Source of the DNA: Octopus bimaculoides
Lineage: Eukaryota
DNA length: 64,000 bases
Assembly (NCBI RefSeq): GCF_001194135.2
Contig: NC_068981.1
Span: 163,335,844 to 163,399,843 of the forward strand
Reading direction: 5' to 3'
Shown one piece after another: positions 17,750 to 52,474 of this stretch (position 1 is the stretch's first letter; each line of letters begins with the position of its first letter). The translations under genes were made by a program, and so were the position numbers. Below the pieces are notes generated by a model. The model worked only from the letters and a program-made list of their open reading frames with translations, did not search any database and was not told the origin of the DNA.

Positions 17750-17874
17750 CAGGGTGTCTACAAATTCTGGGTACATGTGGATTAACACATACTTTAAGAA
17801 ATTATTATTTCTTATATTTAATTGTTTGTTATGATTTTATTTACTCCATGTACTCAGACTTTGCGGACACCCTG
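17750..17874. mobile_element. Tc1/mariner-type MITE (125 bp)
   Basis: TA|CAGGGTGTCTACAAATTCTGGGTACATG...CATGTACTCAGACTTTGCGGACACCCTG|TA; 28-bp TIR with 4 mismatches and TA TSD. Confidence 0.9.
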
Positions 17875-17934
17875 TATTATACACATACATAACGTGTGGG
17901 TGTGTGTATAATGGAAAGAGGACGTTGAACGATG

Positions 17935-17968
<34 letters not shown>

Positions 17969-18040
17969 ATAAGTATATTATACACACGTATATGATATAT
18001 GTGTATGCATGCATGTACATTTACACCAATGATTGTGTGC

Positions 18041-18139
<99 letters not shown>

Positions 18140-18366
18140 TACACACACACGTATGCATACATACTCGGACACAAATACGTATATCAAATTCATTTTACTC
18201 GAGAATGCACCGTTTCCAAGCCCTTTGAATGTCTGCTTGTATGTACATGTACGTTCTCACGTATGTACCTATTTGGGGGTTGTTTTTTTTTCATAACCTA
18301 TAAAAATATAGGCTATTCTTTATTAATGTTAGTGTTTGCGCACGGGTTTATTTCTCTCTCTCTCTC

Positions 18367-18414
<48 letters not shown>

Positions 18415-19639
18415 TATACACACAAAAAAAAAGAGAGAGAATGAAATATAATAAACATACAACACGCGCGCAAGGATTACCACAAAAGACAGACAAAATA
18501 ATGCCAATATGCCAGAATATGAATTCGGGTGGAAGACAAAAAAAGAAAACGGAGTTATCTCCACTTTGACTGGACAATTAGAAAAAGACAGAGCGAGCGA
18601 GCGAGCGAGCGAACGAGAGAGAGAGAGAGAGAGAGTATTAGTCTGTGTCATAGCTGAAATAACGATTTCTGTTAACAAGACAAGGCGACAACTTTGTAGA
18701 GTTGTACAGATAGTTCGCTAGGTAGCTGGCTGGTTGGCTGAATCGACAACTTGTATTTCGTTGCATTAGACGCTACCTAGATGACCAGAATTGCTAAAGG
18801 GACTCGTTAGCAAATTCCCACAATGAATTTTCAAACAAACCTCTCTACAAACAATAGAAGGATGGGGGGAAAATGATTTAAATAAAATATGAACTGCTAC
18901 TTTCTATCCGTCTCTTATGCTTCCACAAGGCTACGCACTCCCACATACGATACCAGGGCTTGTCAAACACTTAAAAAATACATTTAATACACACGTATGT
19001 ATACTGACACATGCTATATATTTATTCATACACACACTTCGCGTCACGAGTTAAACCCTAAATGTGTACATTACATCTCTCCCTCGTGTGTATGTGTGTG
19101 TGTGTGTGCATGTATAATATTACGTAAATATTTATACAAATACACAAATTTATATGTACTTAGTTTATTTACAGATTTTATATGTATAGACACACACACA
19201 CACATATATATATTATATATATACCCCACACACTCAAAACTATATAAAATTATATACACATATACGCACGCATATGTATGTGTGTATTCACACAATAATA
19301 TAAGCACACAATACATATACACAAAGATATTTAACAAAATTGCACACAAACACAATACACATATATAGGGTATCTATGTTATAAGTGCGACTATATAGCA
19401 CCTAAAACAAATTGCGAAAGTATAGCAGAGGACTGGTGCGGATCTAAACACATATATGTACAGAATTTACTTGTGAATAAGTGTCATTATTTTATATGGA
19501 TTTTAACAGAAAAAACTAGGGTCCGACTTAGACATACATGGTGGGTCAAAGTTAAAATTATGACATGAAAAATTTTATACTAGGGGTGCGACGGATCCAC
19601 GAGTAAATACGTTGGAATATACATGTATTTATACACCGT

Positions 19640-19785
19640 ATATGCGTCTCCTTGTTTCTTTCTGTGGAAGAGCGTAGGCTCGAAACGTTAAAGACTTTTT
19701 CACTTCCCGAGCGTTAAACTAATACATCTGTTTGTTGTCTACACCACCTGCCTTCGTCTTTTTTGTGAATTCTCCCTATATATAA
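19640..19785 (+). mobile_element. Probable Penelope-like-element terminal fragment carrying a minimal hammerhead-like motif
   Basis: tcttt-ctgtgga-a-gagc-gtag-gctc-gaaac-gtt-aaaga; its 3' end (ttgtgaattctccctatatata) recurs at about 53125-53150. Confidence 0.5.
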
Positions 19786-19867
19786 ATATATATACATACA
19801 CACACCTTAAGGCGGTGCTCCAGCATTGCTGCAGTCAAATGACAAGCAAAAGAATGGAATGTGCACA

Positions 19868-19919
<52 letters not shown>

Positions 19920-20806
19920 ATATATATATATATATAAGCATATGTATGTAACTAATTTGGCATGTATATTAAATATGCATGTTGGACTACGCCTTGAAGC
20001 TTCTTGTGAAACAAATCATCTCCAATACTTTCTATCGGTTTGTTTTGCCGAACAGCTAAGTTATAGGGTCCTAAGCGCACCAACGCTGATTGATTGTGAA
20101 AGGGTGCGAGAACAAACACACTATATATATATATATATATATATAAAATAAACACACGCACTCATACGACGGTCTTCCAGGATTTCCATGCACCGTAATA
20201 CTCATGCGTGCCCAACGTGCAGCGAAGCGAGGTGCTTAACAGCAACACCTTCGTGCTGGTTAACATTTCGCGTACCTCATTTAATATACACAGGAGTTAT
20301 ATTATAAATTTCATGCTCAAGTAATACAGTAATTGGACGGGCTTGTACATACAGCGTGCCGTCCGGGGAATCCTATCTGACCCACGCAGGCAGGGTTGGG
20401 TCAGACATAGGAATACTTTGAAGACGATTTTCTACGGCCGAAAGCTCTTCCTGTTGTCAACCTTAACCGGTTTCCGAGCGAGGTAATACTTGGTCATGGC
20501 CAGACGTTTTTATTTTTATTTTTATGGAAGACTGAAAGCGAGCGCACACAACGGGCTTCCTTCAGAAGTTTCCGCCTATCAAATCCACTCACTAAGCTTT
20601 TGATCGACTCGTGGGGTACCGTTGAAGACACTTGCCCAAGGTGTCACACAGTGGGACTGAACACGAAACGTCTGTTTGTATATATGAACCTAATATATAT
20701 CTTAAAGTGTCCTACTTAATTCGTTTATGATATTAGGACTGCAGGATTTCTTGAAGGGTTTCCACATTGAGCGGCAAAAGGTTTAGACGGTACAATTTAC
20801 CGCGAA

Positions 20807-21179
20807 TGTTGGCACTCCGTCGGTTACGACGCCGAGGGTTCCAGTTAATCCGATCAACGGAACAGCCTGCTCGTGAAATTAACGTGCAAGTGGCTGAGCA
20901 CTCCACGGACACGTGTACCCTTAACGTAGTTCTCGGGGGAGATTCAGCGTGACAAGGCTGGCCCTTTGAAATACAGGTACAACAGAAACAGGAAGTAAGA
21001 GTGAGAGAAAGTTGTGGTGAGAGAGTACAGCAGGGTTCGCCACCATCCCCTGCCGGAGCCTTGTGGAGCTTTAGGTGTTTCCGCTCAACAGACACTCACA
21101 ACGCCCGGTCTGGGAATCGAAACCGCGAACCTACGACCGCGATTCCGCTGCCCTAATCACTGGGCCATTGCGCCTCCAC
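20807..21179 (-). mobile_element. tRNA-derived SINE (second family), intact with CpGs retained
   Basis: Minus-strand head gtggaggcgcaatggcccagtgattagggcagcg...gtttcgattccc has A- and B-box-like motifs, followed by a non-tRNA body. Confidence 0.85.
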
Positions 21180-21842
21180 ACTTTATCACGCAGACACTGA
21201 CATTATGCATAAACAATGCCTTCTTTTACACACAATGCATGAAAGCAGATCGACACATGAAACTGGCATTAAGAAATGAGAGATTAAACAACGTAGAAAA
21301 TATCCAAAATGCGGTATTATTTATTAACTCAAACTACACAGGGAAATCACGTTCAGGAAAAATGGGCGACCACTTATAAAATACACAGAGACATTTACTC
21401 CTTCAACTTCTGTTTATACGTCCCCGTTTCTAGCGGTTCGGCAAAAGAGACCGATAGAATAAGTACTAGGCTCACAAAGAATAAGTCCTGGGGTCGATTT
21501 GCTCGACTAAAGGCGGTGCTCCAGCATGGCCACAGTCTGAAACAGACTGAAACAAGGAAAAAAAAAATATGTGTGTAAATACATGAAGTACAACACCGAT
21601 ATTCCAGAAACTTTGGTTCCTAAGCGTTTCCGAATTAATAATTTTTTCCAAACACAATCTGAATTATACAAATATTAAATCTACTTATATAATTTTTTTT
21701 TTAAATTTAAAAAACCCAGCTACCTCTACAATAAGGTTAAATTAGCGGGGATTATAAAGAGGTTCCGGACCTTTCAGTATCCGGAAACTCGGTGCTGTAC
21801 CTGCATTGCGTGTTTATGTGTGTGTATACACACACATACCTA

Positions 21843-22146
21843 AACAAGTGTGTCCCCGACTTAATTTCTTTGTAATTTTCAGGAAAATACTAATATATCT
21901 TGATGAAATTTTATACAAATACTTTTCAGAATCTAGGGTGTAAAAAACTAAAAATGTTGGGCACTGTACGTGTGCATGTGTGCGCGAAACACTAATATTT
22001 TTTCCGCATTAGATTCCGGATATAACCCTAATATACACACCATTTGAAAAATATTTGTATGAAATTTCATTTAAAAAAAAAAAAAATCTGTTTTACGGAG
22101 AGTTTATGAGTAAATAAAATCGGGGTGTGGTGGGGAGCAAACTTGT
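21843..22146. mobile_element. Degenerate inverted-repeat element
   Basis: aacaagtgtgtcccc...atgaaattttatacaaatacttttca is mirrored by tgaaaaatatttgtatgaaatttcat...ggggagcaaacttgt. Confidence 0.4.
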
Positions 22147-22708
22147 AGCAGTTGCATAGTTTCATGGTTTTTTTTTGTCTTTTTTTTTTTTTTTTTCCTT
22201 ACTGGATGCGGTATCTCTTCGGATAGCTTAAATTTAAAAACAGAAAAGAAAGTGAATAAATATACAGCATTTTGGGCGTTCTCTGTACCCTTAAAATTTA
22301 TCGTCTCCGGGCAAATTTAAGTATATGCCTTTTTATGCATGTGCATATATATATATCACAAAAATCCTCGCATTTGAGAGGCGGAAGCGGCAGATGCAGT
22401 ATTATTAATGCCAAAAGGTAATATTTATCCCCACTTCAAAGTGGAGTTTAAGTGGGGATAAATACACATTTATACACGCACACAAGTATATGCTTGTGTT
22501 TGTTACCCACCCACAAGCTCTTGACAACCGGTGCTGGTTTGTTTACCTCACTAGAAACTTAGCGGTTCAGCATGGGACCGATTGAATAAGCACCAGACAA
22601 AATAATAATAATAAAAGCTAAGTACAGTTCGACTAAATCCATTTAAGTGATGCCCCAGCGTGGCCGTAGTCCAATGACTGAAACAAAGATAAAAATAAAT
22701 TCACAACG

Positions 22709-23090
22709 TAAGAGTGGCTACGTGGTAAGTAGCTTGCTTACCAACCACATGGTTCCGGGTTCAGTCCCACTGCGTGGCACCTTGGGCAAGTATAGCCTCG
22801 GGTCGACCAAAGCCTTGTGAGTGGATTTGGTAGACGGAAACTGAAAAGAAGCCCGTCGTATATATACATATGTGTGTGTGTGTTTGTCCCCCCCCCCCAC
22901 CAACATCGCTTGACAACCGATACTGGTATGTTTAGGTCCCCGTAACTTAGCGGTTCGGCAAAAGAGAGACCGATCGAATAAGTACTAGGCTTTCAAAGAA
23001 TAAGTCCTGGGGTCGATTTTCTCGACTAAAGGCGGTGCTCCGGCATGGCCGCAGTCAAAAGACTGAAAACAAGTAAAAGAGTAAAGAGTA
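22709..23090 (+). mobile_element. tRNA/CORE-type SINE (probably OR-family-like), full length, CpGs intact
   Basis: tRNA-like head (tggctacgtggtaag...gggttcagtccc), CORE-like ggcaccttgggcaag, internal (TG)n, tail aatgactgaaacaagtaaaaga-type. Dozens of related copies in the window. Family name is from recall. Confidence 0.9.
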
Positions 23091-23769
23091 TAACATTATG
23101 GAAGGTCCAACTATTGACTTAAAATCTATTGGATCGACGCGAATTTATGTATCTGCTTTTAATTCATAAATATATTTACAGAAAATAAAACATCTATATA
23201 TTATGTGGACGCATGTATACACATTACGTGCATACATATTGCATGTATGCACACAAATACATCTCGTAGTTGTCAGGCATGTATATTTCTATTATAGTCT
23301 CCTGACTTACAAAAAGACGGAACAGGAAGTAGATATGGGACACGTGACAAAAACATCCTGTTCAAGGAACTGACTTTTCTTTCATGCTCTCTCGCTGACA
23401 GAACAAAACTAGGTTAATTGTATCTATGTGTATATAGATAAGTACATACACATACATTTATACGTCTACGTATATACACATATGTATATCGATGTATGCG
23501 CACACAATTATACGTCTTAAGCTTTTACTTGTTTTAGTCGTTGGGCTGCGGTCATGCTAGGGCACAACCTTGAAGGGTTTAGTCAAACAAATCGACCCCC
23601 ATCAATTTTTCCACCCCCTCAAAACTTCGCACTTGCTCCATCTGTTTTTGTTGCTGAACAGCAAAGTTACGGGGACGTAAACAAACCCGCCTTGGTTGTC
23701 GTCGTATTCTATATGCGTGTGTGTTTCCGTCAACATTATCCACACGCAAAATTTTTGATGGCTCAAGGT

Positions 23770-24101
23770 GTTGCGTAGCGAAACTGCACCCAAGACCACA
23801 AGGTGGGAAAGCACGAAGCAGAGTACTTATTCTATCGGTTTCTTTTGCCGAACCACTAGGTTACGGGGACGTAAACACACCAGCATCGGTTGTCAAGCAA
23901 TGTTAGCGGGGGGTGGGGTGACAAACATACACACACAAATATATACGACGGGCTTCTTTCAATTTCCATCTACCAAATCCACTCACAAGGTTTTAGCCGG
24001 CCCGAGGCTATAGTAGAAGACACTTCACCCAAGGTGCCACGCAGTGGACTGAACCCAGAACCATGTCGTTGGTAAGCAAGCTACTTAGCACACAGACACT
24101 C

Positions 24102-24105
<4 letters not shown>
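23770..24105 (-). mobile_element. tRNA/CORE-type SINE
   Basis: Reverse complement of the 22709-23090 family. Confidence 0.85.
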
Positions 24106-24156
<51 letters not shown>

Positions 24157-24513
24157 AGGATTTCATATATATGTATATATATATAGTATTAAAACTTCAG
24201 ATGTATGTTAAATTCTGAATTAAAAATAAATCAATGAAGTAATTTAGTATGGACGGGTGACGGAAAGACAGATATGCGTGTACATGTGTGTGTGTGTGAA
24301 TATTCTATACGTAAACTAATTTTCTCAGCTACCATATATATAACTTCATTGCCACTGCCAGTCACACAAAGGAACTCATCCACAAATGTTACGATATTTG
24401 TAGCGAAATGTACTGTTATATTATTGCGTTTTTGTTATCCGAACTGCGATTGTCATCCTCCTATACTCATATCCATACATCACACCTTATGCAGATATTG
24501 TAACAGTTTTTAA

Positions 24514-24752
24514 CTGTTTTGTTCCTAACCACCTCAGACCGTCCTTGGTCTTTTGATACAAACCCCATTGTTTAAAATGATATAAATTGTAATCTTTCAT
24601 CAAAATTCTATACTAATATAGACATCTGCTTAATAATAAGAAATTTAATCTTTAATAATTAGGTAGTTATCTTTTTTTACTAAATTCTTCATGGTTTTTT
24701 AAAAATTGAATGAACAAACGCAGTATGTGTCAACAGAAATATGGTAAAGGGG
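24514..24752. mobile_element. piggyBac-like MITE (family B)
   Basis: TTAA at 24510-24513; ends gtcaacagaaatatggtaaagggg; similar to 4445-4662, 4725-4946 and 14765-14910. Confidence 0.65.
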
Positions 24753-25359
24753 TATAAACAAGTCCGGTCGCATAACCTCTGGGTAACACGAAGCTTCGAG
24801 AGAAAACTGATGAAAACGTAAATATAAATAAATCTGTGTTGTTTATTTAAAAGCATTTGCTGACGGTGTGAGACCAAACTAACAGAGAATCAAACCAAAA
24901 GACAAGAAAATAGGCGAAACTTAAAAAGCCCAGCCACTTTATCGTTACTATATATGTGTGTGGTGTGTGTGTGTGTCCTACTTGTTTCAGTCAATGGATT
25001 GCGGCCTTGCTGGGGCACCGCCTTGAAGGGTTTAAGTCGAACAAATCAATCCCGATAGTTTTTTCTTCAAAGTCTGGTACTTATTCTGTTGGTCTCCTTT
25101 ACCGAGCCAACACTGGTTTGTCAAGCTTATGTGTGATGTGTGTGCGTGGGGGGGGGGATATTAAACCGGTCTGCACACAAACACACACACACATATATAT
25201 ATATACATGTAACCATGCACAGACATTATACACATACATGTAATCGTTGAATCACCGTGTATAAATATTCATATATCTAGATGAATAAATTTTATACACG
25301 TTCGTGTATCTGTGTAAATATACACACACGTGTATGAATATAAATGTGCAAACATACAT

Positions 25360-25437
25360 TACGATAGATAGCTAGATAGATCGACAAACAGACATATAGA
25401 CAGACAGACAGACAGACAGACAGATAGATGATTGACT

Positions 25438-25488
<51 letters not shown>

Positions 25489-25655
25489 GATTGACAAACA
25501 GATAGATAGATAGATAGATGATTGACAGACAGACAGATAGATAGATGATTGATAGATAGATAGATAGATGATTGACAGACAGACAGATAGATAGATGATA
25601 GATATATAGATAGATATATAGATAGATAGATAAATAGATAGATAGATAGATATTA
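25360..25655. repeat. Compound (GATA)n/(GACA)n satellite with recurring GATGATTGAC variant units
   Basis: Direct reading. Confidence 0.95.
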
Positions 25656-25904
25656 CATCGATACATGTGTATGATTTTTCACAATGAAACATAGTTTCGT
25701 TAGACACGCTGGGAAGAGGGGAGTTGACCTAAAATGTAATAACAGAACTAAAAGGAATAAGCGAAAGTGGAGCAGTAAAGAGTTTCTGCACAATCGTTCG
25801 ACCAGTGAGAAACGGCAATCAAAATCTCCCATGCATATTGTTTCCAACCATTAAAAAAAATGGGGGTGGGGAGAGACACACATCCAATAACATAGTACTA
25901 CAAA

Positions 25905-26230
25905 CATAGGCGCAGTCGTGGTTGTGTGGTGAGAAGCTTGCTTCCCAACTCCATGATTCCCTTGGCCAAGGGTCTCTCCTATAGCCTCGGAAAAAATCAC
26001 ACGTATAGGTGTCATATCTATCTATCTATCTATGTGTGTCTTTGTGTTTGTTTGTTCTTCGGTCATTGCTTGACAACCGGTGTTTGTGTTTACGTCCCCG
26101 TAACTTAGCGGTCGGCAAAAGAGATCGATACTAAGCTTTAAAAAAAAATCCTGGGGTTGGTTTGATCGACTAAAACCCTTCAAGGTGGCGCTACAGTATG
26201 GCCGCAGTCAAATGACTGAAAACGGTATAA
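25905..26230 (+). mobile_element. tRNA/CORE-type SINE, internally deleted
   Basis: Head ggcgcagtcgtggttgtgtggtgagaagc; tail gcagtcaaatgactgaaa. Confidence 0.8.
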
Positions 26231-26271
26231 AATACATAAATCAGCCCCCCCCCCCAGGTCGCGAATGTTTT

Positions 26272-26791
26272 TCCCACGAGAGTTCCGGACCCCAGTTATG
26301 AACTCATTTGCATACAGCCAATCAGAGCTCAACTATCAAACTAATTTATGAGCGCATAACAAGTGATGGGAGATAAGATATGGTCACTTATGGATAAAGA
26401 ATGACCATGCTTCTTTTCCCTTTTAATAATGCTTATTGTTCCTGTTCTTGTTTCAACCATGGCTGCCTCTGCGTAGTTATTTGTGCTGTTGTTTATTTTG
26501 TATAACAATAAGGGGAGAGGGTTGCTAGCACATCACTATCTACCCACATTTTCCCCATACACATCTTTACCATATGCGGCCCTAACAAAATCCGATTATA
26601 GATATAGATGCAAATCTATCTAATCACTTGTCTCCGTCCAAAAATCAGGCATAACTTTGCGATCGGTCGACATCGTTCTTCGTCTTGAGTTTACTTGGTA
26701 GAGTGTGTTTATTAACTTGACAAGGTCAAAGTGAGCTCTGATTGACTGTATGCAAATGAGTTCATTACTGGGGTCCGGAACTATCGTGGGA
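26272..26791. mobile_element. Non-autonomous DNA element with 59-bp terminal inverted repeats
   Basis: 26272-26330 matches the reverse complement of 26733-26791 with 3 mismatches; no clear TSD. Confidence 0.85.
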
Positions 26792-27259
26792 CTCCCCCTC
26801 CCCTCGGCCAAACGGCATGTTCACGGCGTGAGCAAAGAATTCATTGGTTTATTCGCCTGTTGGCTCAAGTGTTAAGCTAATCCTAAATAACAAATTTGAA
26901 TTATGTGTCAGTTGCCAAACTCTTTATTGTATCCCATAGCAACAATACATAGCTTTTCAGAACGGTGTGTAACCTCACTAATTTTCGTTTCAAGCATGTT
27001 TCTTCAGACCTATTATCTATTCCTTTATCTGTCTACAAATGTGTGCATTGTAAAATAAATAAATAAATAAATAAAAAAATCGCGTCTCGTTTGTTGGAGA
27101 AGAAACCTTGTACGAAACACTGATAATTTTCTCCACAACGCTATTAAATCCGTCGGGACACAGAGGACATTTTATATAATCGATAAAGACACCATTGCTC
27201 TGTTACTATTATTTTCAAACATTTAAGAAACGTATGTTTACATCGGTCCCAACAATTAT

Positions 27260-29370
27260 GGAGTGATCAACTGATGCTTATTTTCTCGACCCCGAAAGGA
27301 TGAAAGGCAAATATCGACCTCGGCGATATTTGAACCAAGAAGGTAAGGACGGGCGAAATACCGCTAGGCAATTTTACCCGGCGTGCTAACGTTTCTCTCA
27401 GCTCGACGTCTTGATAATACACACAGATGTTTCTATAATGAGTTGTGCATATCAAAATATGAACAGAATTAAAAGTGCGTCCTACATAAAACCTACATTT
27501 GAGTAGGTAAGTATAAATGAAAAATAACCAGTGGATTAACGGCAGAAGGTGCATGTCCATACACACAGACGCAAACACAAATGCTGCACAAAAACCTGTG
27601 CCCCTTACATCAGAACCAAGATAAAACAAAAATAGTTAACAGATACAATTAATATTAAAGTTATTGAATGCAAACAGAAAGACACACGCATACACATAGT
27701 TGCGATTCACTATATGTGACATTATGTAGTATAAATCTAAGACGCACTTGGAAATAGCAGCTAATATTTAGGAAGCCCACGCCTATGTGTATTCATTCAG
27801 CTGCTTGTAAAGCTATGTTGTTAGCGGTTTTTTATTGTTCTGTCGGTGAAAATCGAACGTAAAGTGATGTAGCTAAACACTTATCTACCACTACATTGGT
27901 TACGTCCTTTCATTAATAATCCTTACTACTAAACGCACAAGGCTAGGAATTTTGGGGGACGACACTAATCGATTATATCGACCCCCAGTGGTGGTGATGA
28001 TGATGACTTGAAATTTTGACAGAAGGCCAGCAATTTCGGGAGATAGGATAAGTCGATTATACCCACCCCAGTGATCAACTGGTACTTATTTTAACGACGC
28101 CGAAAGGATGAAAGGCGAAGTCGACTTCGGTGGAATTTGAACTAAGAACGTAAAGACGGATGAAATGCCGCTAAGCATTTTGTCCAGAGTGCTAACGTTT
28201 CTGCCAACTCGTCGCTTTAATCACAATAATGCTTTCTACTATAGGTCCAAAGCCTGAAATTTGTGGGGAGGGGGACTAGTCGATTGCATCGACCCCAGTG
28301 TTTCACTGGTACCTAATTTATCGACCGCGAAAGGATGAAAAGTAAAGTCAACCTCGGCGGAATTTGAACTCAGAACGTAGCAACGGGCGAAATACCGCTT
28401 AGCATTACGCCCGTCGCTACGTTCTGAGTTCAAATTCCGCCGAGGTCGCTAAGCACTTCGCTCGGCCGCTAAAGATTCTACCAGCTCGCCGCCTTAATAA
28501 TAATTTCTTTTATTAGCCACAGGGGCATAGATAAAGGGGACATCACAAGGACAGACAACAATTTGTGTGCGGATTTACATAAAGGATGTGGAAAAGATGG
28601 TGAAATGTGATTAGAGTGTACATAATATACAAAGTATGTAATAATATGAATAACGCAGTCCTCTTGAAATAGGAGAAACTCCAGCTCGGGCCAATCAAGG
28701 AACCTCACAGATCCAGGATTACCCTGATCACCAAAGGTACGAGCCCTTTCTCTTGCTCTCCAATCTACAGGAGCATACTTAGAGGAGGACCATTCACTCT
28801 AACCGTTTTTGCCCCAGTCATCCATCTTTTCACAAATTCAATTGAAGGTAGCGCTTCCCTCTCTATCCTCACTTTCCTTTCCAAGTGGAACTTCAAAAAG
28901 TCAATGAGAGCCTGACCGAAGAAGATGGTGTCTTTCTCCAATCCTTGGGTCCCCAATCCTTTCGGCTTCATCCATGAACCACAAAACCTCTTTCGCCATC
29001 CCTGTGCCTATAGTCACAACTATAGGTACGTGGCTTGAAATTTCGAATGGGGGGAGGAGCTAGTCGATTGCAACGATTCCCTAGTGTTCAACTGGTGGAG
29101 CTTGAAAAAAGATGAAAGAAAGTCAACCTCGTCGGAAATTGATCTGAGAATGTAAGGAAAACGGAAGAAACGCCGCTTAGTGGTAACGATAATAATCGTT
29201 TCTAATATAGGCACAAGACTAGAAATTTAGAGTTCCCGCGGTACAATCAATTAAATCAATCTCAATACTCGACAAAAAATTTTTTTTTATCAATTTTGAA
29301 AGAATGAAAGGCAAAGTTGACCGCAGTGAGATTTGAACTTGAACCATAAAGAGAGAAGAAATTCAAAGAA
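27260..29370 (-). mobile_element. Cluster of at least 5 same-orientation copies of a third tRNA-derived SINE family
   Basis: Repeated atcgacccc...aaggatgaaaggcaaagtcgacctcggcggaatttgaactcagaacg at about 27260-27410, 27921-28217, 28233-28495, 29010-29190 and 29200-29370. Minus-strand head ggcggcgagctggcagaa with B box gttcaaattcc. Confidence 0.85.
28500..29012 (-). mobile_element. L1/Tx1-type LINE 3' fragment
   Basis: Minus translation ...QALIDFLKFHLERKVRIEREALPSIEFVKRWMTGAKTVRVNGPPLSMLL* resembles L1/Tx1 ORF2 C-termini, followed by a 3' UTR and A-rich end. Confidence 0.6.
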
Positions 29371-31261
29371 TGTTGTCTAACGATAACTTCTTTGGTCCAG
29401 ACACGAGGCTTTTTTTTTATATATTCAGGTGATGGTGGGAGTCGGTCGATAAAATGGGTTCCATATAAAGGCGTGCAATAAAAGAGCTACAATGGACAGA
29501 CATATGTTCTATACATAGAACACTAGAATCAAATCAATCAAATCGATTGACCGACTGAGCGATCAATCAATCGAATGACTTGAACAAAAGAACACGATGA
29601 CAATTACAAATATTCGATTCTTGTTAGTTTTGCGTATAAGACTATTGACTGAGCTCACAGCTGTTTGGCCGAATCCAGGTAGGTGCCCACTAAGAGGATG
29701 AGAGTAAAAGTGGTGGTGGTGGGGAAATATTTGCGAACCAGTGGGATACGATACTAGTTTATCAATAAATAACTTGTCTTGCTACCTTATTAAGCGAATG
29801 ATAACCACACTAAAATAGGAGGAAAGAAACTTGATTTAAATACCCAATTTGAAAGAAAATTAGCCTTTACTATCAAGAGTGATAGGTAATACAGTCACCT
29901 GGTATGACAAGGTGTAATGGTTCGAGTCCCGGCACTACAGTAGTTTTTTTTTTTTTTTCCCTTTATCTCAAAGTTGTGCTTCTAATATCTAATATCATTT
30001 TACATTCTGTACCACAGCAGTTAAATTCATTCACAAATGACCGACTTTGTCAGCATACAATAAGTAAACACAGAAATCCCGCCCACCACCTTGTTCATTC
30101 TTTTGTTTCAACAAATACTGGAACAAAATGATTTAGCTCTGATAGACGCAACGGAGAAATGCTTTTTTTTTTTTTTTACCAACTAAATTTTTCTTACGAC
30201 TACTAAACATCTGGGATTTCTTTCTATATCGTTAATAAATTAAAATAAGAAAAACGTAGAATAAAATAATCCTTAGCCAGAGCTACATAACAAATCTGGG
30301 ATAAGATGTTTCATTTTCCATAGCTCAGGACAGTTAGATATTAAAGTAAAACCGAATTAAGCAAAATTAATTGACCTTCGCAGTGAAAAGGAAAAAATTG
30401 GTCCGCAACGAGGTATTAACTAAAGAAAAACGACAAAGAAACCACACGAATGATTTTTACCTCAAACTAGTTTTAAATATAAAATGAAATTTAACAGTAA
30501 TAATAATAACGATTAGGCGTTGGGACCCTGTGACATACTTTGGACGTTCAGTAATAATCAATCTTTTGAATTAACTGCAATGTTTAATTGGTACATATTT
30601 TAACAAGGCGTCATCACGAGAGGAACCGAACTATGAAGTAAGTTAAAAAAGAAAAAAAAAAGAGGATTAGGCGGGCGAAAGCTAAGTTGAGGGGCGAATA
30701 TAATACTGATTTTCTGGGGATAATTTTATCGAGGCACAAAAAAAAAAGGAGAGAAAGATGAAAAATAAAAGAAAATATAATGAGCGTAATGCGAGGAATT
30801 TGCCGGAAATAGAGCTCTAAATCGTAGCCAGTGTAAAATTGGTAATATTATTGTTGATACAATACAAAGAAAAGAATACTGTAACACACACACACACACA
30901 CCAGGATTTCAAATTCAATCAAGCTACACCGCATTGCAACTCTTCATTCTACAATTTCATTTCATTTACACAACTACTCCCCACCCCCTCTACAAAGAAA
31001 CACACACACACACACATAATCACGCACATTTCTCTGAAAAAATGTTCAGCCACTGAAGCCGTTCTATGGTCTATCTATACATGATATATCGCACACACAC
31101 ACACATATATATATATATGTGTGTGTGTGTGATGTAAGGTACAAAGAAATTTTTATAACATACATATTATACACAAATAAGATTACATTATTTCACATTT
31201 TAAACAAGAAAAAAAAAAATTCTTTCGAAGCATAAAAATGTAACTTTCAAAATAACCTTAC

Positions 31262-31335
31262 CTGTTTTTTCCTTGATTTCGCATAAAACACTGAATAAAG
31301 CAGGTTTCATACGATGACAGTTTAGCGTGTGTTTC
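31262..31335 (-). CDS. exd: extradenticle/Pbx (TALE homeobox, PBC class) internal coding exon 2, PBC-A domain
   Basis: Minus strand reads tcttttttttttccAG|G AAA CAC ACG CTA AAC TGT CAT CGT ATG AAA CCT GCT TTA TTC AGT GTT TTA TGC GAA ATC AAG GAA AAA ACA G|GTAAGG, i.e. (R)[24 protein letters not shown]. This matches the Exd/PBX PBC-A sequence as recalled. Length (74 nt) and phases (2 to 1) match PBX exon 2 as recalled. Too short for the ORF track. Confidence 0.97.
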
Positions 31336-31642
31336 CTGGAAAAAAAAAGAGAGGACTAGAGTTATTAAAAAGAAGGGAAAAAAAAAGAAAAGATATTGTA
31401 TAACAGATTAACAGCAACACAATTCACGCTATATACAAAATAAAGGGGAAAAACAATCTCAATAAAGTTAAAACAACTGGATACATACAATGTTAAAATT
31501 TATCGCATGCAGCAAAAATATTTATTTATTTCTGTTGGCGTATACTGTAATAATTAAGTTTTAAGTTTATGTTGTTTGTGCACTTACATGTATTGTTTTT
31601 GTGCGTGACAGAGATGTACGTGTGTGCAACCGCGTCTGTGCG

Positions 31643-31680
<38 letters not shown>

Positions 31681-31921
31681 NNNNNNNNNNNNNNNNNNNN
31701 NNNNNNNNNNNNNNNNNNNNNNNNNNNNNNNNNNNNNNNNNNNNNNNNNNNNNNNNNNNNNNNNNNNNNNNNNNNNNNNNNNNNNNNNNNNNNNNNNNNN
31801 NNNNNNNNNNNNNNNNNNNNNNNNNNNNNNNNNNNNNNNNNNNNNNNNNNNNNNNNNNNNNNNNNNNNNNNNNNNNNNNNNNNNNNNNNNNNNNNNNNNN
31901 NNNNNNNNNNNNNNNNNNNNN
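31681..31921. other. Assembly gap likely to overlap exd exon 1. Other gaps: 2949-3407, 7533-7567, 8052-8495, 9625-9900, 16852-17196, 33335-33680, 46478-46487, 52840-53118, 54740-55066, 55461-56115, 61807-61816
   Basis: N-runs are seen directly; the overlap with exon 1 is inference. Confidence 0.6.
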
Positions 31922-32033
31922 AGGGTAGAAGAGCCGAAGAAGGATCCGTGAATATCTGAGGGTCACCTCAACCCGTCGAACGGTTCCAAATGCAGTCTGG
32001 TTCCCTGTTTCGTAGATTTGTCTCTCAGAGGCC

Positions 32034-32046
32034 CTTTATATATAAG
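32034..32046 (-). promoter_or_regulatory. TATA-like box of a putative exd promoter
   Basis: Minus strand CTTATATATAAAG, followed by about 110 nt of unique ATG-free sequence (31922-32033) that runs into the gap 0.35 kb upstream of exon 2. Lies in a CpG-retaining region. AT-rich genomes produce such motifs by chance. Confidence 0.4.
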
Positions 32047-32158
32047 CACGCATATATAATATCGACACACACACACACACAGGCATAAATAGCACAATAA
32101 ATTTCTGACTATAATTGATATTGAGATTTTATATCAGTAAATGTTTATTTATCACTAA

Positions 32159-32200
<42 letters not shown>

Positions 32201-32201
32201 A

Positions 32202-32239
<38 letters not shown>

Positions 32240-34091
32240 AGCAGGGCAGTCTCGGCCGAGGGATTTTTCAATTATCCAGACTCTGAACATAAGACATCTA
32301 ATTAAGCGGAAATCAAAAAGTCCAAAGATTATATTTGCAAGGAGGTGCTTACTCCGGACCTGTGGGTGGGGATATATACGCTGTATTGATTAAAAAAAAA
32401 ATACCCGCGGAATGTAATACGCGTGGGTGTAAAACACACAAACTAACCTATTCCGACACGCACAAAGGAAAAAAAATATTTATAAAGACCGACACGGTAG
32501 GTTTGAGTGGGTGTGTAAGCATAAAAGAAATCATTCAGTTACAGGGATTCGTTAGAATTTTGGTATTTGAACATACAGGACGGCGAAAAGGGGTCGAGTC
32601 CCACACATACGTACACGTATCATACATACACATGTAGCCATATACGTGTATTCGAATATATATATATATATATACACATAGCTTTCCGATCCAATGCAAG
32701 TTATGGGTCCAATATAGGGATGTTTCCACGTGTGATATTTGTATAATAGAACACGAATTTATATATATATATATAAGGATTAAGAAACTATCTACAGAGT
32801 GATTCATAGCTTCGTACGAATAAACAAGCTATAAATGTAATTAATGATTATGCCCTGTGTGTAGCTGTGTGATTAGGTTATGTATTACTGACTTCACGAG
32901 ATTTTTGAATGCCAAACAATAATATACTATTTGAGAGACTCGTTTAGTCAGATCCACAACAAACGTGCGTGTGTGTGTTTGTGTATGAAATATGCACATG
33001 AACATGTATATATATGCTTGTGTATGTTCATACACGCACGCACTCAGGTACGTGTATGCACGCACGCCCAGACACACACACATAAATATATATACACACA
33101 TATTTCTATAAGCAAATATATACATGCATACATATACATCTGTATATGCGAACATTTATACATGTGTATGTAAATAGGCATATGTGTCTGTCTATATATA
33201 TATATATATATATATATGACTGTAAAAAGGATTTAGATAATCCTATCAGGTGGTGCTATCAAGTTAGACATAGCCTGGACCAATCTTTGGTCGAAACGTA
33301 TCTAAGTTTATATATATATATATATATATATATANNNNNNNNNNNNNNNNNNNNNNNNNNNNNNNNNNNNNNNNNNNNNNNNNNNNNNNNNNNNNNNNNN
33401 NNNNNNNNNNNNNNNNNNNNNNNNNNNNNNNNNNNNNNNNNNNNNNNNNNNNNNNNNNNNNNNNNNNNNNNNNNNNNNNNNNNNNNNNNNNNNNNNNNNN
33501 NNNNNNNNNNNNNNNNNNNNNNNNNNNNNNNNNNNNNNNNNNNNNNNNNNNNNNNNNNNNNNNNNNNNNNNNNNNNNNNNNNNNNNNNNNNNNNNNNNNN
33601 NNNNNNNNNNNNNNNNNNNNNNNNNNNNNNNNNNNNNNNNNNNNNNNNNNNNNNNNNNNNNNNNNNNNNNNNNNNNNNNNTATATATATATATATATGGA
33701 GAGAGAGAGAGATATGCACAGATACACACACACACATATATATATATATACATGCATACACCGACTTCCCAGACATTATGGTCCGAAACCTCATGTAATC
33801 TGCACTAATTTATGAGCAGGAACTTCAAATTCCCATGGCCGCCAGACAAGTTTATTAGGCGGCCCTGTTTCCCTGTACGTTGTACAGTACACCAGTATTA
33901 ATAAACTTTTATCATTTATACTAATGTACAGATTACCTGTACATTACAAATAAATTCAATATTTGTTTCAGTCAGAGGGGACCAACACATTGCTTCGGAA
34001 AAAATCAGTGAAGGCTTTGGAACCACAAAGGTTCCGAAAAATCGATGTTGTACTTGTATATACATACATATATGTGGGATAGCTGAGTATA

Positions 34092-34640
34092 CAGGGTGGC
34101 CCAAAAGTAAGTTTACGGTTATTCAACTGTCTCTTTCGCATTCATATATTAACAGTTTGGAACTGTTCTTTCAGCAAGATGGAGCACCTCCACGTTATGC
34201 GTTGACGGTAAGGCAATAATACCTTAACCAAGCCTTATCACGACGTTGGTTTGGAAGACGGGGCAGCATCGAATGGCCACCACGTTCACCTGACCCAACA
34301 CAAATGAATTTCTTTTTTCGGGGGTATTGTAAAGAACAAGGTTTATGAGAAGAATCCCAAAACAGTAAGTGAATTAAAAGATAACATTTCTGACGCATTC
34401 ACTGGAATTGATGGAGATCGGAACTTGTGCCACACTGCGTGTCAGTGTTCTGAAGAGGTTTGAAGAATGTTGCAATGTTGAAGGAGGGCATTTTGAGGAT
34501 CTGAGAGATTAAACATTGTCTGTTTAAGATGTGCATAAACAATATGATTGTAAGATAGAAATTTAAATGTAATAAAATGTTTTTAAAAGAAATTTAAAGT
34601 GCCTACGTGATAACCATAAACCTACTCTTGGGCCACCTTG
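34092..34640 (+). mobile_element. Internally deleted Tc1/mariner element with a transposase C-terminal remnant
   Basis: TA|CAGGGTGGCCCAAAAGTAAGTTTACGGTTAT...ATAACCATAAACCTACTCTTGGGCCACCTTG|TA. Internal LFFQQDGAPPRY...EWPPRSPDPTQMNFF...VKNKVY...EGGHFE with a stop and frameshifts. Confidence 0.95.
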
Positions 34641-35544
34641 TATAATTTATATATTCTTACGTTCGTTTCAGTTATTGAACTGTGATCATGCTGACACCGC
34701 CTTGATAGACTGTAGTTATGCTGGGGGGGGGGTCTTGTTGAGCAAATCGATCCCAGCACTTATTCTATCGGTGTGCATAAACAAACCGTATACACAGATA
34801 TGTATACAAGTCTACCAAATCCACTCACAAAGCTTTGATCAGCCCAAAGCTATAGTAGAAAATACCTGTCCAAGGTGCTACGCAGTGGGACTTGAACTCC
34901 GAAACATGTGGTCAGGAAGCAAACTTACCACACAGCCACGGCTGCGCCTACACACACACACATTCGTGCGAACGCACACGCTAGTATACTGGTGATGTCC
35001 AGTAATGGAAATGTTTGTTATGAACTAGGGTTCGCAGACAGTTTAAACCACCCACTACTGTAAAGTGAAAAGTAGCACTCTACCTGCGTATTCCACACAT
35101 AGTGACGTCGTGTGTACTGTTTACTTATTCGATATAACAATTATCAAAATAAATAATGCGCCTAACATGAAAGGATAATGACTTTTAAAAAATTATAGAC
35201 AGGAAAAAATAATTAGAAAAGAAAATCAAGCAAATTAGTGTAAATAATATTGAACTATGCGGAGTGAAGCGTGTGATTCTGTGTATGTTGCACACATTGC
35301 ATGATGTTTGTGTGAGTACTATTCGATTGGTTTGAATGTACATGTGTGTGTGCGTGCGTGCGTGCGTACTGTTGAACTGATACAAGTCAATTTAGAGAGA
35401 CAAATACACGCAAAACCAAAAAGAGATACACGTGTTACTGACACTCTACACAAACACACACACACATATCTGTGTGTGTATGTATGTAAACACACACATA
35501 TATACACACTACGCACACACAAAAGATATATAGATACATATGTA

Positions 35545-36092
35545 CATAGCGTGCCACCAAAAAGATGTTAACATCTGATTACTCAATTTTCATTTCTTTG
35601 TAGATTTACTAATTAGAAATAATGAAATAAGCCAGACTAGGCTTTGAACGAAGGCAATTTTATCCTAAAATGTTTACTGGAAGTTTGAAAATGCAGTCAA
35701 AGCACAAAGACAGTTTAGGAGGGAAGTTCCACCTTCATGACTTGAATTAGAGATAAATTTGAAGCAAGATGGAAATGTTCCAGAAGACACTCTGCAAGAA
35801 AGGATACTAAAAAAGAAGTATAGCCAGTGTTCAAAGAAATCTGTGCTGTCAAGTAAGTTGTGAGATAAGAACCTCAAAATCAAGGATTGATTGCATTTTG
35901 AAACATTGTCATTATGTTTCATTCCAAATAATGCATGCACTCAAATATGACGATCCAGACCAAAGAGTAGAGTTTTGTAAATGGTACTTGGCAAAATGTG
36001 TAGAAGACATGCACTTTCCAACAAGGATTGCTTAGAGTGATGAGGCTACATTTGAATTAAATAACACAGTTAACTGCCACAATTGCACTTCC
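35545..36092 (+). mobile_element. Tc1/mariner transposase N-terminal remnant
   Basis: Frameshifted ...YWKFENAVKAQRQFRREVPPS...MHALKYDDPDQRVEFCKWYL...SDEATFELNNTVNCHNC; TIR-like start near 35545. Confidence 0.85.
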
Positions 36093-37195
36093 CAGTAAAG
36101 TCATGGAACAAAAAAAGAAACTAATCACATTCCTTGAAGAAAATGACTTGCTAACGACCAACATGGTCTTCAACTAGGAAGCTACTGCTTCATACAGCTC
36201 CAACAACACAATGATTGGATGTTTAAACAGTTGCTCGACCTTTAAAATAGCAATATATCTCAATTTTGTGAAAGCCTTTAATAAAGTCAGTCACAGAATG
36301 ATATCATAACCTGCATGATCTCGGCATAGTTGGAAAACTGTAGGAATGGCTACATGGCTTTTAAAACAGATTCCTGACAGTAGTAACCAATGGGGTTATC
36401 TTCCAGGAAACAATAATAGTGATAGGAGCCCCCCCCCAGGTATGATCTTCAGGCCACTGCTAGTCACAGTGACACTCATACAAGCCCTTAGTTATGCAGA
36501 GAGCAAAACTCACTAGATATGCACAAGGTACAAAAGTATCACAGATGATAAAGACCCTGGAAGATTCTATGCACCTGCAACATGACTTACATCCTACATA
36601 TAAGTAGGCTGAAGGAATTAAAATGCAATTTAATGCTGAAAAATTCTAAACCCTCAACTATCAGTAGACGAAATTCAATGCAATGCTGAGAAAATACTTT
36701 GGATCAGGAGAAATTGCAGCCCCAGAATCACAATCAGTATGTGACCCAGGTATTAATATAAGTAATGATGCTTCTTTTCATGTGCAGATTAAGATGTCAA
36801 TGAAATGTAGGTAGCTAGTCAGATAGATTCTACGAACTTTTAGAACTCAAGGGCAGGAAACCATGATGGTCCTCTAGAGAATATTTGCCCACAGCCACAT
36901 CTAGATTATTTTCCCCAATTGTGGTTCCTGCATAGTGTAAAATTAATAGAACTTAAAGCAATCCAAAGCTACAAAAAAAAAAAAAAAAATTGCCTTAGTG
37001 AAACAGATCAGCTACTGAGAAACCGAAGATGGAAAAAATATGCAGTAATGTATGGCTGGAAAATCCTAGAAGGATTTGCATCAAACTTTGGTACTGAAAG
37101 CTATACTAATCCTCAAACAGAGCACCACTGCATAGTACGAAAGATCCAATCCTTGCAATTGAGATCAAAAACCAAATGCTGCATTAGCTTAGGAA
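36093..37195 (+). mobile_element. Decayed CR1-type LINE reverse-transcriptase fragment
   Basis: SKVMEQ...FLEENDLL...IYLNFVKAFNKVSHR...LHDLGIVGKL...RRWKKYAVMYGWKILEG; many stops and frameshifts. Confidence 0.85.
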
Positions 37196-37400
37196 AGACT
37201 GAACTGGTGTGTAGTTCAGGGAAGACTGTACTGGTATGGTCATGTGATGCATATGGATGTGGACAGCTGTGTGAAGAAGTGGTGATCACTCAATATAGAT
37301 GATGCTTATGGAAGAGGGTGATCCAAGTTAACACGGGATGCAGTTATGAAGGCTGATTACAGGTAACTTTGGACCTCACAGAGATAACAAGGGAGTGGGA
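37196..37400 (+). mobile_element. RTE-type LINE 3' fragment
   Basis: ...RLYWYGHVMHMDVDSCVKKW*SLNIDDAYGRG... resembles the RTE C-terminal 'RLRWYGHV.RM' motif. Confidence 0.7.
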
Positions 37401-37419
37401 TAATTGTGTGTGTGTGTGT

Positions 37420-37479
<60 letters not shown>

Positions 37480-40121: not shown

Positions 40122-40187
<66 letters not shown>

Positions 40188-52426: not shown

Positions 52427-52474
<48 letters not shown>

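What the first reader, a model, noticed from the sequence alone, without database searches (positions are those of the whole stretch)
18400..35500. Fossil methylation map: a 17-kb CpG-retaining domain over the exd 5' end
Seen: same-family SINEs keep CpGs here (20807-21179, 22709-23090, 28233-28495), whereas the otherwise near-identical copy at 7675-8043 shows systematic CG to TG/CA, as do older copies at 42580-42720 and 44050-44460. The transitions near 18.3 kb and 35 kb look sharp. Established: germline 5mC deaminates to T, and invertebrates methylate mosaically, mainly gene bodies. Inference: an unmethylated, valley-like regulatory domain covers the promoter and first 13 kb of intron 2. Caveat: young insertions (e.g. 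55067-55385) keep CpGs anywhere.
Basis: partly seen in the sequence, partly recalled or inferred. Interest (0 to 1): 0.7.

Follow-up and report, generated by a model that had tools for sequence, protein, structure and literature searches.

The report
Unmethylated-DNA footprint inside octopus Pbx gene
An 18-kb stretch around the second exon of an octopus Pbx/extradenticle gene has kept its CpG dinucleotides while the DNA on both sides has lost about 80% of them; this is a clear but ordinary footprint of the patchy germline DNA methylation already described in octopus and other invertebrates.

Summary
CpG observed/expected is 0.96 over about 17.5-35.55 kb, against 0.28 (1-17.5 kb) and 0.19 (35.55-58.7 kb). 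GpC is about 1 everywhere, and TpG+CpA is in excess outside. Change-points are sharp, within 300 bp or less.

Age does not explain the pattern. In one SINE family, copies inside keep 69% of ancestral CpGs and copies outside keep 15%, at similar non-CpG divergence (odds ratio 11.5 after controlling for age). Repeat pairs show 167 sites with CG inside and TG/CA outside, against 14 the other way.

Corrections:
- The left edge is near 17.5 kb and abuts an assembly gap.
- The three "same-family" SINEs belong to three families.
- Only exon 2 of Pbx (31262-31335, minus strand) is in the window. Coding exon 1 is absent from all read letters, so coverage of the promoter is not shown.
- The domain is more likely intragenic, interrupting gene-body methylation.

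Published octopus methylomes already describe genes with unmethylated 5' parts and methylated remainders. I rate this a new example of a known kind, of modest interest.

The parts
17500..35550 (.). CpG-retaining domain D1 (CpG o/e 0.96, GC 37.5%). I infer it has been unmethylated in the germline for a long time.
   Evidence: Support intervals are 17406-17676 (left) and 35369-35665 (right). The right edge lies inside one contig (33681-46477).
1..17499 (.). CpG-depleted block (o/e 0.28) within Pbx intron 2. I infer it was methylated in the germline (gene-body type).
   Evidence: SINE copies here keep 0-5 of up to 16 ancestral CpGs.
35551..58680 (.). CpG-depleted block (o/e 0.19) upstream of exon 2. 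It is probably intron 1 or a 5' intron of the same gene.
   Evidence: No Pbx exon was found. O. sinensis has no other gene called within the 382-kb Pbx range or 10 kb either side.
58681..64000 (.). Second CpG-retaining block D2 (o/e 0.86), running off the window end.
   Evidence: The old repeat copy 60735-60879 shares 6 CpGs with the in-domain copy 28233, at 16.8% non-CpG mismatch.
31262..31335 (-). Pbx/extradenticle exon 2 (74 nt, encodes (R)[24 protein letters not shown]). It has a polypyrimidine tract with AG acceptor and a GTAAGG donor.
   Evidence: The same 74-nt exon exists in Aplysia. Octopus RefSeq models start at its internal Met.
22709..23090 (+). SINE family B copy inside D1. It keeps 15 of 16 ancestral CpGs at 5.5% non-CpG divergence.
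7675..8044 (+). SINE family B copy outside D1. It keeps 4 of 16 ancestral CpGs at 7.5% non-CpG divergence.
47106..47498 (-). SINE family B copy outside D1. It keeps 4 of 16 ancestral CpGs at 9.6% non-CpG divergence.
23816..24101 (-). SINE family B copy inside D1. It keeps 8 of 12 ancestral CpGs at 7.3% non-CpG divergence.
20807..21179 (-). Single-copy repeat (family A) with 27 CpGs. It has a tRNA-like head when read by eye on the minus strand. It is not the same family as 22709 or 28233.
   Evidence: self-hit only. ARAGORN and Rfam found nothing.
28233..28495 (+). Family C repeat inside D1 (23 CpGs, internally palindromic). It is related to 42580-42720, 44050-44460 and 60735-60879.
16852..17196 (.). 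Assembly gap abutting the left edge of D1. It has (TA)n on both sides. CpG o/e is 0.27 to its left and 0.95 to its right.

Best explanation
The window lies inside the very large Pbx/extradenticle gene of an Octopus species. It is probably the draft O. bimaculoides assembly.

Its CpG landscape records long-term mosaic germline methylation. Two blocks (1-17.5 kb and 35.55-58.7 kb) were methylated, and their CpGs decayed to TpG/CpA by 5mC deamination. Two blocks (17.5-35.55 kb, and 58.7 kb to the window end) stayed unmethylated and kept CpG at the frequency expected from base composition.

The 18-kb domain surrounds exon 2. It takes in about 4.2 kb of the upstream intron and 13.8 kb of intron 2. 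Most likely it is an interruption of gene-body methylation within one transcription unit, not the canonical promoter region.

- Shown: the compositional footprint, its sharp edges, and its independence from repeat age.
- Inferred: that the cause is germline 5mC.
- More weakly inferred: that the domain escapes methylation because it is regulatory chromatin that excludes the methylation machinery. This could be an internal promoter giving the Met-in-exon-2 transcripts that RefSeq models, an enhancer cluster, or a Polycomb-type domain.
For: - **CpG-specific depletion with reciprocal TpG/CpA excess.** GpC and GC content are unchanged across segments.
- **Four-segment model.** Edges are resolved to 300 bp or less.
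- **Same pattern in unique and repeated DNA**.
- **SINE family B.** Retention is 53/77 inside against 17/114 outside (Fisher p=2.6e-14), at non-CpG divergence of 11.8% against 14.5%. The odds ratio is 11.5 after controlling for divergence, with 0 of 2000 permutations as extreme.
- **Old copies.** In-domain copies at 19-23% divergence still keep 4/6 and 4/9 CpGs. Equally old outside copies keep 1/16, 0/10 and 0/4.
- **Consensus-free repeat pairs.** Inside-outside pairs give 167:14. Outside-outside pairs give 44:36.
- **Size of the loss.** Loss inside is close to what ordinary substitution at two bases predicts (-ln 0.69 = 0.37 against 2 x 0.122). Outside it is about 6.5 times that expectation.
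- **Gene identity and orientation**.
- **Octopus identity**.
- **Gene range.** It is 382 kb in O. sinensis, with no other gene called in the range or 10 kb either side.
- **Literature.** In O. bimaculoides methylation sits on the bodies of a subset of genes. [quoted passage not shown]
Against: - No methylation data were available. The link to 5mC rests on established chemistry and on genome-wide patterns published for the presumed species.
- The left edge coincides with a scaffold gap, so only the right edge is proven contiguous.
- Whether the upstream CpG-poor block belongs to the Pbx transcription unit is inferred, not shown. Exon 1 was not located.
- CpG-decay strand asymmetry (30:29 and 15:12) gave no information on transcription. 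SINE orientation (8+/6- within intron 2, tallied from the copies) gave none either.
- A regulatory role for the domain is untested.
Confidence: 0.8

Rival explanations
1. The domain is the promoter-proximal unmethylated region of exd/Pbx. Transcription starts inside it, upstream of exon 2, and gene-body methylation begins 13.8 kb into intron 2. The CpG-poor DNA upstream would then be a separate methylated unit.
For: RefSeq models of three Octopus species begin at the Met inside this exon or at another alternative exon. None carries exon 1. The pattern 'first part unmethylated, rest methylated' is a described octopus class, MP3. An internal promoter in the domain is compatible with the best explanation too.
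Against: Codons upstream of the Met in exon 2 are conserved with synonymous changes only, and they are preceded by a canonical acceptor. The exon is therefore spliced to an upstream coding exon, and that exon is absent from the read letters. The two in-domain gaps (241 and 346 N, with (TA)n at one or both ends) are too short for an exon 1 of 368 nt or more, as seen in the related cephalopod transcript. The upstream 23 kb is strongly CpG-depleted, and O. sinensis has no neighbouring gene within 10 kb of its Pbx gene.
Confidence: 0.2
2. Age effect only. Repeats and other DNA inside the domain are simply younger, so they have had less time to lose CpGs.
For: Age does matter within each class (LRT for divergence p=1.6e-4).
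Against: Non-CpG divergence is similar inside and outside (11.8% against 14.5%). The domain effect remains after controlling for it (odds ratio 11.5, p=2.7e-12). The oldest in-domain copies keep more CpGs than the youngest outside copies. Unique DNA shows the same contrast.
Confidence: 0.02
3. Assembly artefact. Contigs from an unmethylated part of the genome, or from another genome, were scaffolded into a CpG-poor locus.
For: The left edge coincides with the gap 16852-17196. The draft has 12 gaps in 64 kb.
Against: The right edge lies within one contig, 33681-46477. The same repeat families occur inside and outside. Exon 2 sits in the domain in the expected orientation, with a structure shared with Aplysia. 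The gap flanks are the same (TA)n microsatellite.
Confidence: 0.03
4. A methylation-independent mutational or compositional difference creates the CpG contrast. Examples are local biased gene conversion, a recombination hotspot or replication timing.
For: None specific. It cannot be formally excluded without methylomes.
Against: GC content and GpC o/e are nearly the same across segments. The differences are specifically CG to TG/CA at shared ancestral sites. Edges are sharper than 300 bp.
Confidence: 0.04

Closest known systems
Mosaic invertebrate methylation read from CpG o/e, as shown for Ciona. There, methylated and unmethylated domains were predicted from CpG depletion, and methylation was targeted to transcription units (Suzuki et al. 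2007 and Tweedie et al. 1997, cited from my own knowledge).
   Same: There are long domains of CpG depletion and CpG retention with sharp edges. Depletion falls over intronic, transcribed DNA. TpG/CpA is reciprocally in excess. The inference rests on the same logic.
   Different: Here the unmethylated domain appears to lie inside a single very large gene, rather than between transcription units or over a whole unmethylated gene.
Octopus bimaculoides gene methylation patterns MP2 and MP3 (Macchi et al. 2022, PMC9476566)
   Same: It is the same genus and probably the same species. The TSS or first part of a gene is unmethylated and the remainder methylated. The pattern is invariant among brain and hatchling samples, which fits a long-lived footprint.
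   Different: Those classes were defined on annotated transcripts binned from TSS to TTS. This locus also has a methylated-type block upstream of the annotated start. That fits a 5'-truncated annotation rather than a new pattern. The gene's class could not be looked up: there were no hits in that paper's supplements.
Vertebrate DNA methylation valleys or canyons (5 kb or more, mean methylation below 0.15, over developmental transcription-factor genes, often Polycomb-bound; PMC5806489)
   Same: It is a large (18 kb) unmethylated-type block with methylated-type flanks, over part of a developmental homeobox cofactor gene. It is not a GC-rich CpG island.
   Different: Methylation was inferred, not measured. 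The host genome is sparsely methylated, not globally methylated. No chromatin data exist. The block covers an internal exon and intron rather than the whole gene or a known promoter.
Hypomethylated or demethylated intragenic regulatory regions in gene-body-methylated developmental genes of sea urchin and lancelet (Skvortsova et al. 2022, PMC10936051)
   Same: [quoted passage not shown]
   Different: Those regions lose methylation during development, as that paper's abstract states. From my own knowledge they are far shorter than 18 kb. The domain here is 18 kb and must be unmethylated in the germline over evolutionary time to keep its CpGs.

Membership tests
Footprint of mosaic germline CpG methylation (CpG o/e domains) | CpG depletion specific to the CpG dinucleotide (GpC and GC content unchanged) | tested here: met
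   CpG o/e is 0.19-0.28 against 0.86-0.96. GpC o/e is 0.98-1.07. GC is 34-37.5%.
Footprint of mosaic germline CpG methylation (CpG o/e domains) | Reciprocal excess of the deamination products TpG/CpA, and CG to TG/CA changes at homologous sites | tested here: met
   TpG+CpA o/e is 1.32-1.40 outside against 1.15 in D1. Repeat-pair asymmetry is 167:14. Both TG and CA variants occur at the same ancestral sites.
Footprint of mosaic germline CpG methylation (CpG o/e domains) | Effect not explained by sequence age | tested here: met
   Odds ratio 11.5 for the domain after controlling for non-CpG divergence; 0 of 2000 permutations as extreme.
Footprint of mosaic germline CpG methylation (CpG o/e domains) | 5mC actually present in germ cells over the depleted blocks and absent from the retained blocks | not testable with these tools
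   No methylome data could be reached. Only genome-wide statements from PMC9476566 were available.
DNA methylation valley / canyon | 5 kb or more with mean methylation below 0.15 (PMC5806489 methods) | not testable with these tools
   The length is met by proxy (18 kb). The methylation level was not measured.
DNA methylation valley / canyon | An exception within a globally methylated genome | tested here: not met
   The two local flanks are methylated-type. However, fewer than 10% of CpGs are methylated genome-wide in O. bimaculoides, according to PMC9476566. This rests on the literature and on the species assignment.
DNA methylation valley / canyon | Covers a developmental regulator gene or promoter, with Polycomb/H3K27me3 or H3K4me3 marks | tested here: inconclusive
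   It overlaps exon 2 of Pbx. The promoter is not shown to be inside. There are no chromatin data.
CpG-island / non-methylated-island promoter | GC-rich (classically above 50%), CpG o/e above 0.6, 0.2-2 kb, at a transcription start | tested here: not met
   GC is 37.5% and the length is 18 kb. CpG o/e is met. No transcription start was shown.
Octopus MP2/MP3 gene methylation pattern (PMC9476566) | Unmethylated TSS or first third of the annotated transcript, with the remainder methylated | tested here: inconclusive
   Relative to RefSeq models that start in this exon, the CpG footprint fits: it is retained for 13.8 kb downstream, then depleted for 17.5 kb or more. The annotation is 5'-truncated, and the gene's class was not found in that paper's supplements.

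The most novel reading that the evidence does not exclude
The whole window lies inside one transcription unit, and the 18-kb domain is an evolutionarily stable, sharply bounded unmethylated 'valley'. It is embedded in the methylated body of a giant lophotrochozoan Pbx gene and marks an internal promoter or a Polycomb/enhancer block. That would be a vertebrate-type methylation-valley architecture at a Hox-cofactor locus in a mollusc. Its edges are set by something other than exons or repeats, since both lie in ordinary intronic sequence.
Probability: 0.3. Interest if true: 0.55.

Novelty: new member of a known kind. Interest (0 to 1): 0.3.

Why it matters
The case shows that a raw-sequence reader can recover a germline methylation map at sub-kilobase resolution, and that repeat copies serve as internal clocks separating methylation from age. 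Biologically it flags three things:
- A candidate regulatory block, or an internal promoter, around exon 2 of a key Hox cofactor gene in octopus.
- Probable 5' truncation of the Pbx gene models in three Octopus annotations.
- Methylation boundaries deep in introns whose determinants are unknown.

None of this changes current understanding of invertebrate methylation. It is a clean locus-level example that public octopus bisulfite data could confirm quickly.

Tried and rejected
1. **Looking for exon 1 and exon 3 in the window.** I used tblastn with Drosophila, vertebrate and mollusc sequences, short-query sensitive settings, regular expressions in six frames, and blastn with a related cephalopod transcript. 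Only exon 2 was found.
2. **Fetching orthologous octopus DNA.** The gene ranges are too long for the tool (113.8 kb in O. vulgaris, 382 kb in O. sinensis), so no DNA was returned. The O. bimaculoides product is not on record. Two window ORFs are not on record. The Pomacea product is not on record.
3. **Comparison with Aplysia.** Its Pbx locus has the same exon 2 but a flat CpG o/e of 0.5-0.8, so it does not help with the domain.
4. **Transcription direction of the upstream block.**
   - CpG-decay strand asymmetry is 30:29 and 15:12.
   - SINE orientation within intron 2 is 8+/6-, tallied from the copies.
   - CA/TG skew is uninformative.
   - AT skew is positive across the whole window, but the genome baseline is unknown.
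5. **RNA and repeat annotation.** Rfam and ARAGORN gave no hits, so the tRNA-like heads of the SINEs are read by eye only. A Pfam scan of ten TE-like ORFs gave nothing above threshold, so the mariner-like and LINE-like fossils are also by-eye calls.
6. **Supplements of PMC9476566.** A search for Pbx found no occurrences.
7. **First segmentation script.** It timed out and was rerun vectorised.

Full report

Yes. In 2-kb windows, CpG observed/expected (o/e) is 0.9-1.1 from about 17 kb to about 35.5 kb, and 0.1-0.4 from 1 to 16 kb and from 36 to 58 kb. By segment:

| Segment | CpG o/e |
|---|---|
| 1-17.5 kb | 0.28 |
| 17.5-35.55 kb | 0.96 |
| 35.55-58.68 kb | 0.19 |
| 58.68-64 kb | 0.86 |

GpC o/e stays at 0.98-1.07 and GC at 34-37.5%. 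TpG+CpA o/e is 1.15 in the domain against 1.32-1.40 in the depleted blocks.

A binomial change-point model on P(G|C) is best with four segments by BIC. P(G|C) is 0.053, 0.181, 0.034 and 0.141, and the log-likelihood is 259 units better than for one segment. The 2-log-unit support intervals for the edges are 17406-17676, 35369-35665 and 58477-58963.

The left one is near 17.5 kb rather than 18.3 kb. A second CpG-retaining block at the right end of the window was missed. Unique DNA and DNA repeated within the window give the same contrast: 0.95 and 0.96 inside, 0.17-0.30 outside.

**2. The assembly gaps**

The two gaps inside the finding (31681-31921 and 33335-33680) start and/or end in (TA)n microsatellite. 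CpG o/e on their two sides is 1.11/1.00 and 1.00/0.74. No reading frame relevant to the finding crosses them, so they do not affect the result.

It abuts the left edge (o/e 0.27 to its left, 0.95 to its right). CpG density already rises at 16603-16800. The left edge can therefore only be placed within about 16.6-17.7 kb, and its contiguity is not proven.

The right edge lies within a single contig (33681-46477) and is secure.

**3. Age or methylation?**

20807-21179 hits only itself. 22709-23090 is the family of 7675-8044. 28233-28495 is the family of 42580-42720 and 44050-44460.

I aligned 19 copies of the 22709/7675 family. I called 16 ancestral CpG sites, defined as columns where copies carry CG, TG or CA. 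Results:
- Copies inside the domain keep 53 of 77 sites (69%).
- Copies outside keep 17 of 114 (15%). Fisher p=2.6e-14.
- Non-CpG divergence from the consensus is 11.8% inside against 14.5% outside.

Matched examples from the same table:

| Copy | Location | Non-CpG divergence | CpGs kept |
|---|---|---|---|
| 22709 | inside | 5.5% | 15/16 |
| 7675 | outside | 7.5% | 4/16 |
| 24979 | inside | 19.4% | 4/6 |
| 23522 | inside | 23.1% | 4/9 |
| 5059 | outside | 20.6% | 1/16 |
| 110 | outside | 20.9% | 0/10 |
| 40615 | outside | 20.3% | 0/4 |

In a binomial regression, the domain term remains after controlling for divergence (odds ratio 11.5, LRT p=2.7e-12). Zero of 2000 copy-level label permutations reach it. 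Age also contributes (p=1.6e-4).

A consensus-free test on all self-BLAST repeat pairs gives:
- 167 sites with CG inside and TG/CA outside, against 14 the other way.
- 44:36 for outside-outside pairs.
- 19:30, with 74 shared CpGs, for inside-inside pairs.
- Non-CpG mismatch of 0.15-0.20 in these classes (0.13-0.21 over all classes).

22709 against 7675 gives 14:0 with 4 shared. 28233 against 42580 gives 5:0. 28233 against 44050 gives 8:0.

Inside the domain, CpG loss (-ln 0.69 = 0.37) is close to what ordinary substitution at two bases predicts (2 x 0.122). Outside it is about 6.5 times that expectation (computed).

The domain has been protected for as long as the oldest repeats in it have existed.

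**4. What is in the domain?**

The only Pbx/extradenticle coding sequence in the window is a 74-nt exon on the minus strand, 31262-31335. It encodes (R)[24 protein letters not shown]. It has a polypyrimidine tract with an AG acceptor, and a GTAAGG donor.

Aplysia californica has the same short exon as its second coding exon. Exon 1 lies 5.8 kb upstream and exon 3 lies 3.2 kb downstream.

Neither exon 1 nor exon 3 is in the read letters of the window. The exon 1 of a closely related cephalopod transcript also finds nothing. That transcript is the Logan contig L002, whose exon 2 is 68/76 identical to the window, against 60/76 for Aplysia.

**5. Organism and gene models**

RefSeq proteins of Octopus bimaculoides (XP_014777406 and isoforms) and O. 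sinensis start at '[16 protein letters not shown]', which is the Met inside this very exon. O. vulgaris models start at another alternative exon.

The window is therefore from an Octopus. The gap-rich draft suggests O. bimaculoides, but that is an inference.

The eight codons upstream of that Met differ from the related cephalopod and from Aplysia only at synonymous positions: 7 synonymous and 0 non-synonymous codon differences over the whole exon against the cephalopod transcript, and 13 and 1 against Aplysia. They are therefore translated. A coding exon 1 must exist upstream, and the octopus models are 5'-truncated.

The related transcript's exon 1 is at least 368 nt and is GC- and CpG-rich. 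It would not fit in the two in-domain gaps of 241 and 346 N, which have (TA)n at one or both ends.

The Pbx gene range is 382 kb in O. sinensis, with no other gene called in it or within 10 kb. In O. vulgaris the range is 113.8 kb for the shorter model.

**6. Interpretation**

The 'fossil methylation map' reading is well supported as a footprint. The CpG-specific, TG/CA-directed, age-independent loss is what germline 5mC deamination produces (established chemistry).

The presumed host species has exactly this kind of mosaic (PMC9476566):
- Fewer than 10% of CpGs are methylated.
- Methylation is concentrated on the bodies of a subset of genes.
- The patterns are the same in brain and hatchling.

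What is not supported is that the domain 'covers the promoter'. Three points make it more likely that the whole window lies inside the transcription unit, with the domain interrupting gene-body methylation around exon 2 (my estimate, about 0.7):
- Exon 1 is absent from the read letters.
- The 23 kb upstream of the domain is as depleted as the downstream intron.
- O. sinensis has no neighbouring gene nearby.

The second CpG-retaining block (58.7 kb onward), or sequence beyond the window, is then the natural place to look for exon 1.

An internal promoter inside the domain would fit the RefSeq models that begin in exon 2. It remains possible and is compatible with either reading.

Why the domain escapes methylation is not known. 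I commit, at about even odds, to regulatory chromatin that excludes the methylation machinery (a promoter, an enhancer cluster or a Polycomb-type block). The alternative is a passive 5' effect.

**7. Rivals**

- Age only is refuted.
- Mis-assembly could at most account for the left edge.
- A methylation-independent compositional cause is unlikely, given the unchanged GpC and GC and the site-specific CG to TG/CA changes.

**8. Comparison with what is known**

The closest known things are:
- CpG-o/e domain maps of mosaic invertebrate genomes (Ciona; from my own knowledge).
- The octopus MP2/MP3 classes (PMC9476566).
- By analogy only, vertebrate DNA methylation valleys: 5 kb or more with mean methylation below 0.15, often Polycomb-bound (PMC5806489).

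Membership in the first is met on every sequence-level criterion. Actual 5mC could not be tested. Membership in 'valley' fails on the criterion of a globally methylated genome and is untestable on methylation level and chromatin. It is not a CpG island, with GC of 37.5% over 18 kb.

**9. Verdict**

This is a robust observation and a largely correct reading, with a wrong or unproven detail about the promoter. It is a clean new example of a well-known phenomenon in a species whose methylome is already published. Interest is modest (0.3).

The most novel reading not excluded is a stable, sharply bounded valley-like block inside the methylated body of a giant Pbx gene in a mollusc. I give it a probability of about 0.3. 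It would be moderately interesting if true.

Noticed in passing
window 58681-64000: A second CpG-retaining block (o/e 0.86) starts sharply at about 58.5-59.0 kb and runs off the window end. An old family C repeat in it (60735-60879) shares 6 CpGs with the in-domain copy. It is a candidate location for the missing 5' end of the gene.
   Followed up: partly
window 31262-31335 (-), and proteins P0238/P0254/P0244: RefSeq Pbx models of O. bimaculoides and O. sinensis start at the Met inside exon 2. O. vulgaris models start at another exon. Yet the eight codons upstream of that Met are conserved with synonymous changes only. The octopus Pbx models therefore look 5'-truncated, lacking the N-terminal part of the PBC-A domain. 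Exon 1 is missing from this window.
   Followed up: partly
Its placement is uncertain. Its CpG retention could come from a collapsed multi-copy contig rather than from youth.
   Followed up: no
window, all 12 gaps: About nine of the twelve N runs start and/or end in (TA)n or TA-rich microsatellite. The assembly seems to break at long TA repeats rather than at genes.
   Followed up: yes
window 28233-28495 (also 28051-28210, 27262-27375, 60735-60879): The family C repeat is internally palindromic: 28351-28446 matches its own reverse complement at 89%. It occurs as several adjacent partial copies, so it looks MITE-like or hairpin-forming rather than like a typical SINE.
   Followed up: no
window 33905-34545 (+), 35700-36100 (+), 36211-36309 (+), 48456-49571 (+): By eye these are decayed transposon coding fragments: mariner-like transposase motifs (FQQDGAPP.., ..GGHFE.., ..RVEFC.W..) and LINE reverse-transcriptase-like stretches. 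Pfam found nothing above threshold, so these calls are unverified. One mariner-like fossil begins just outside the right edge of the domain.
   Followed up: partly
window 18594-18614 and 35353-35365: Short CpG-containing tetranucleotide microsatellites, with a CG every 4 bases, lie inside the domain. The second lies next to its right edge. They add only about 10 CpGs and do not drive the signal.
   Followed up: no
L001 (Aplysia californica KB941832.1) 10001-31752: The Aplysia Pbx gene is only 21.7 kb, with a flat CpG o/e of 0.5-0.8. The octopus ortholog is at least 15 times larger (382 kb in O. sinensis). Aplysia also has two tandem alternative copies of the homeodomain-encoding exon (24646-24801 and 25286-25432).
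   Followed up: no
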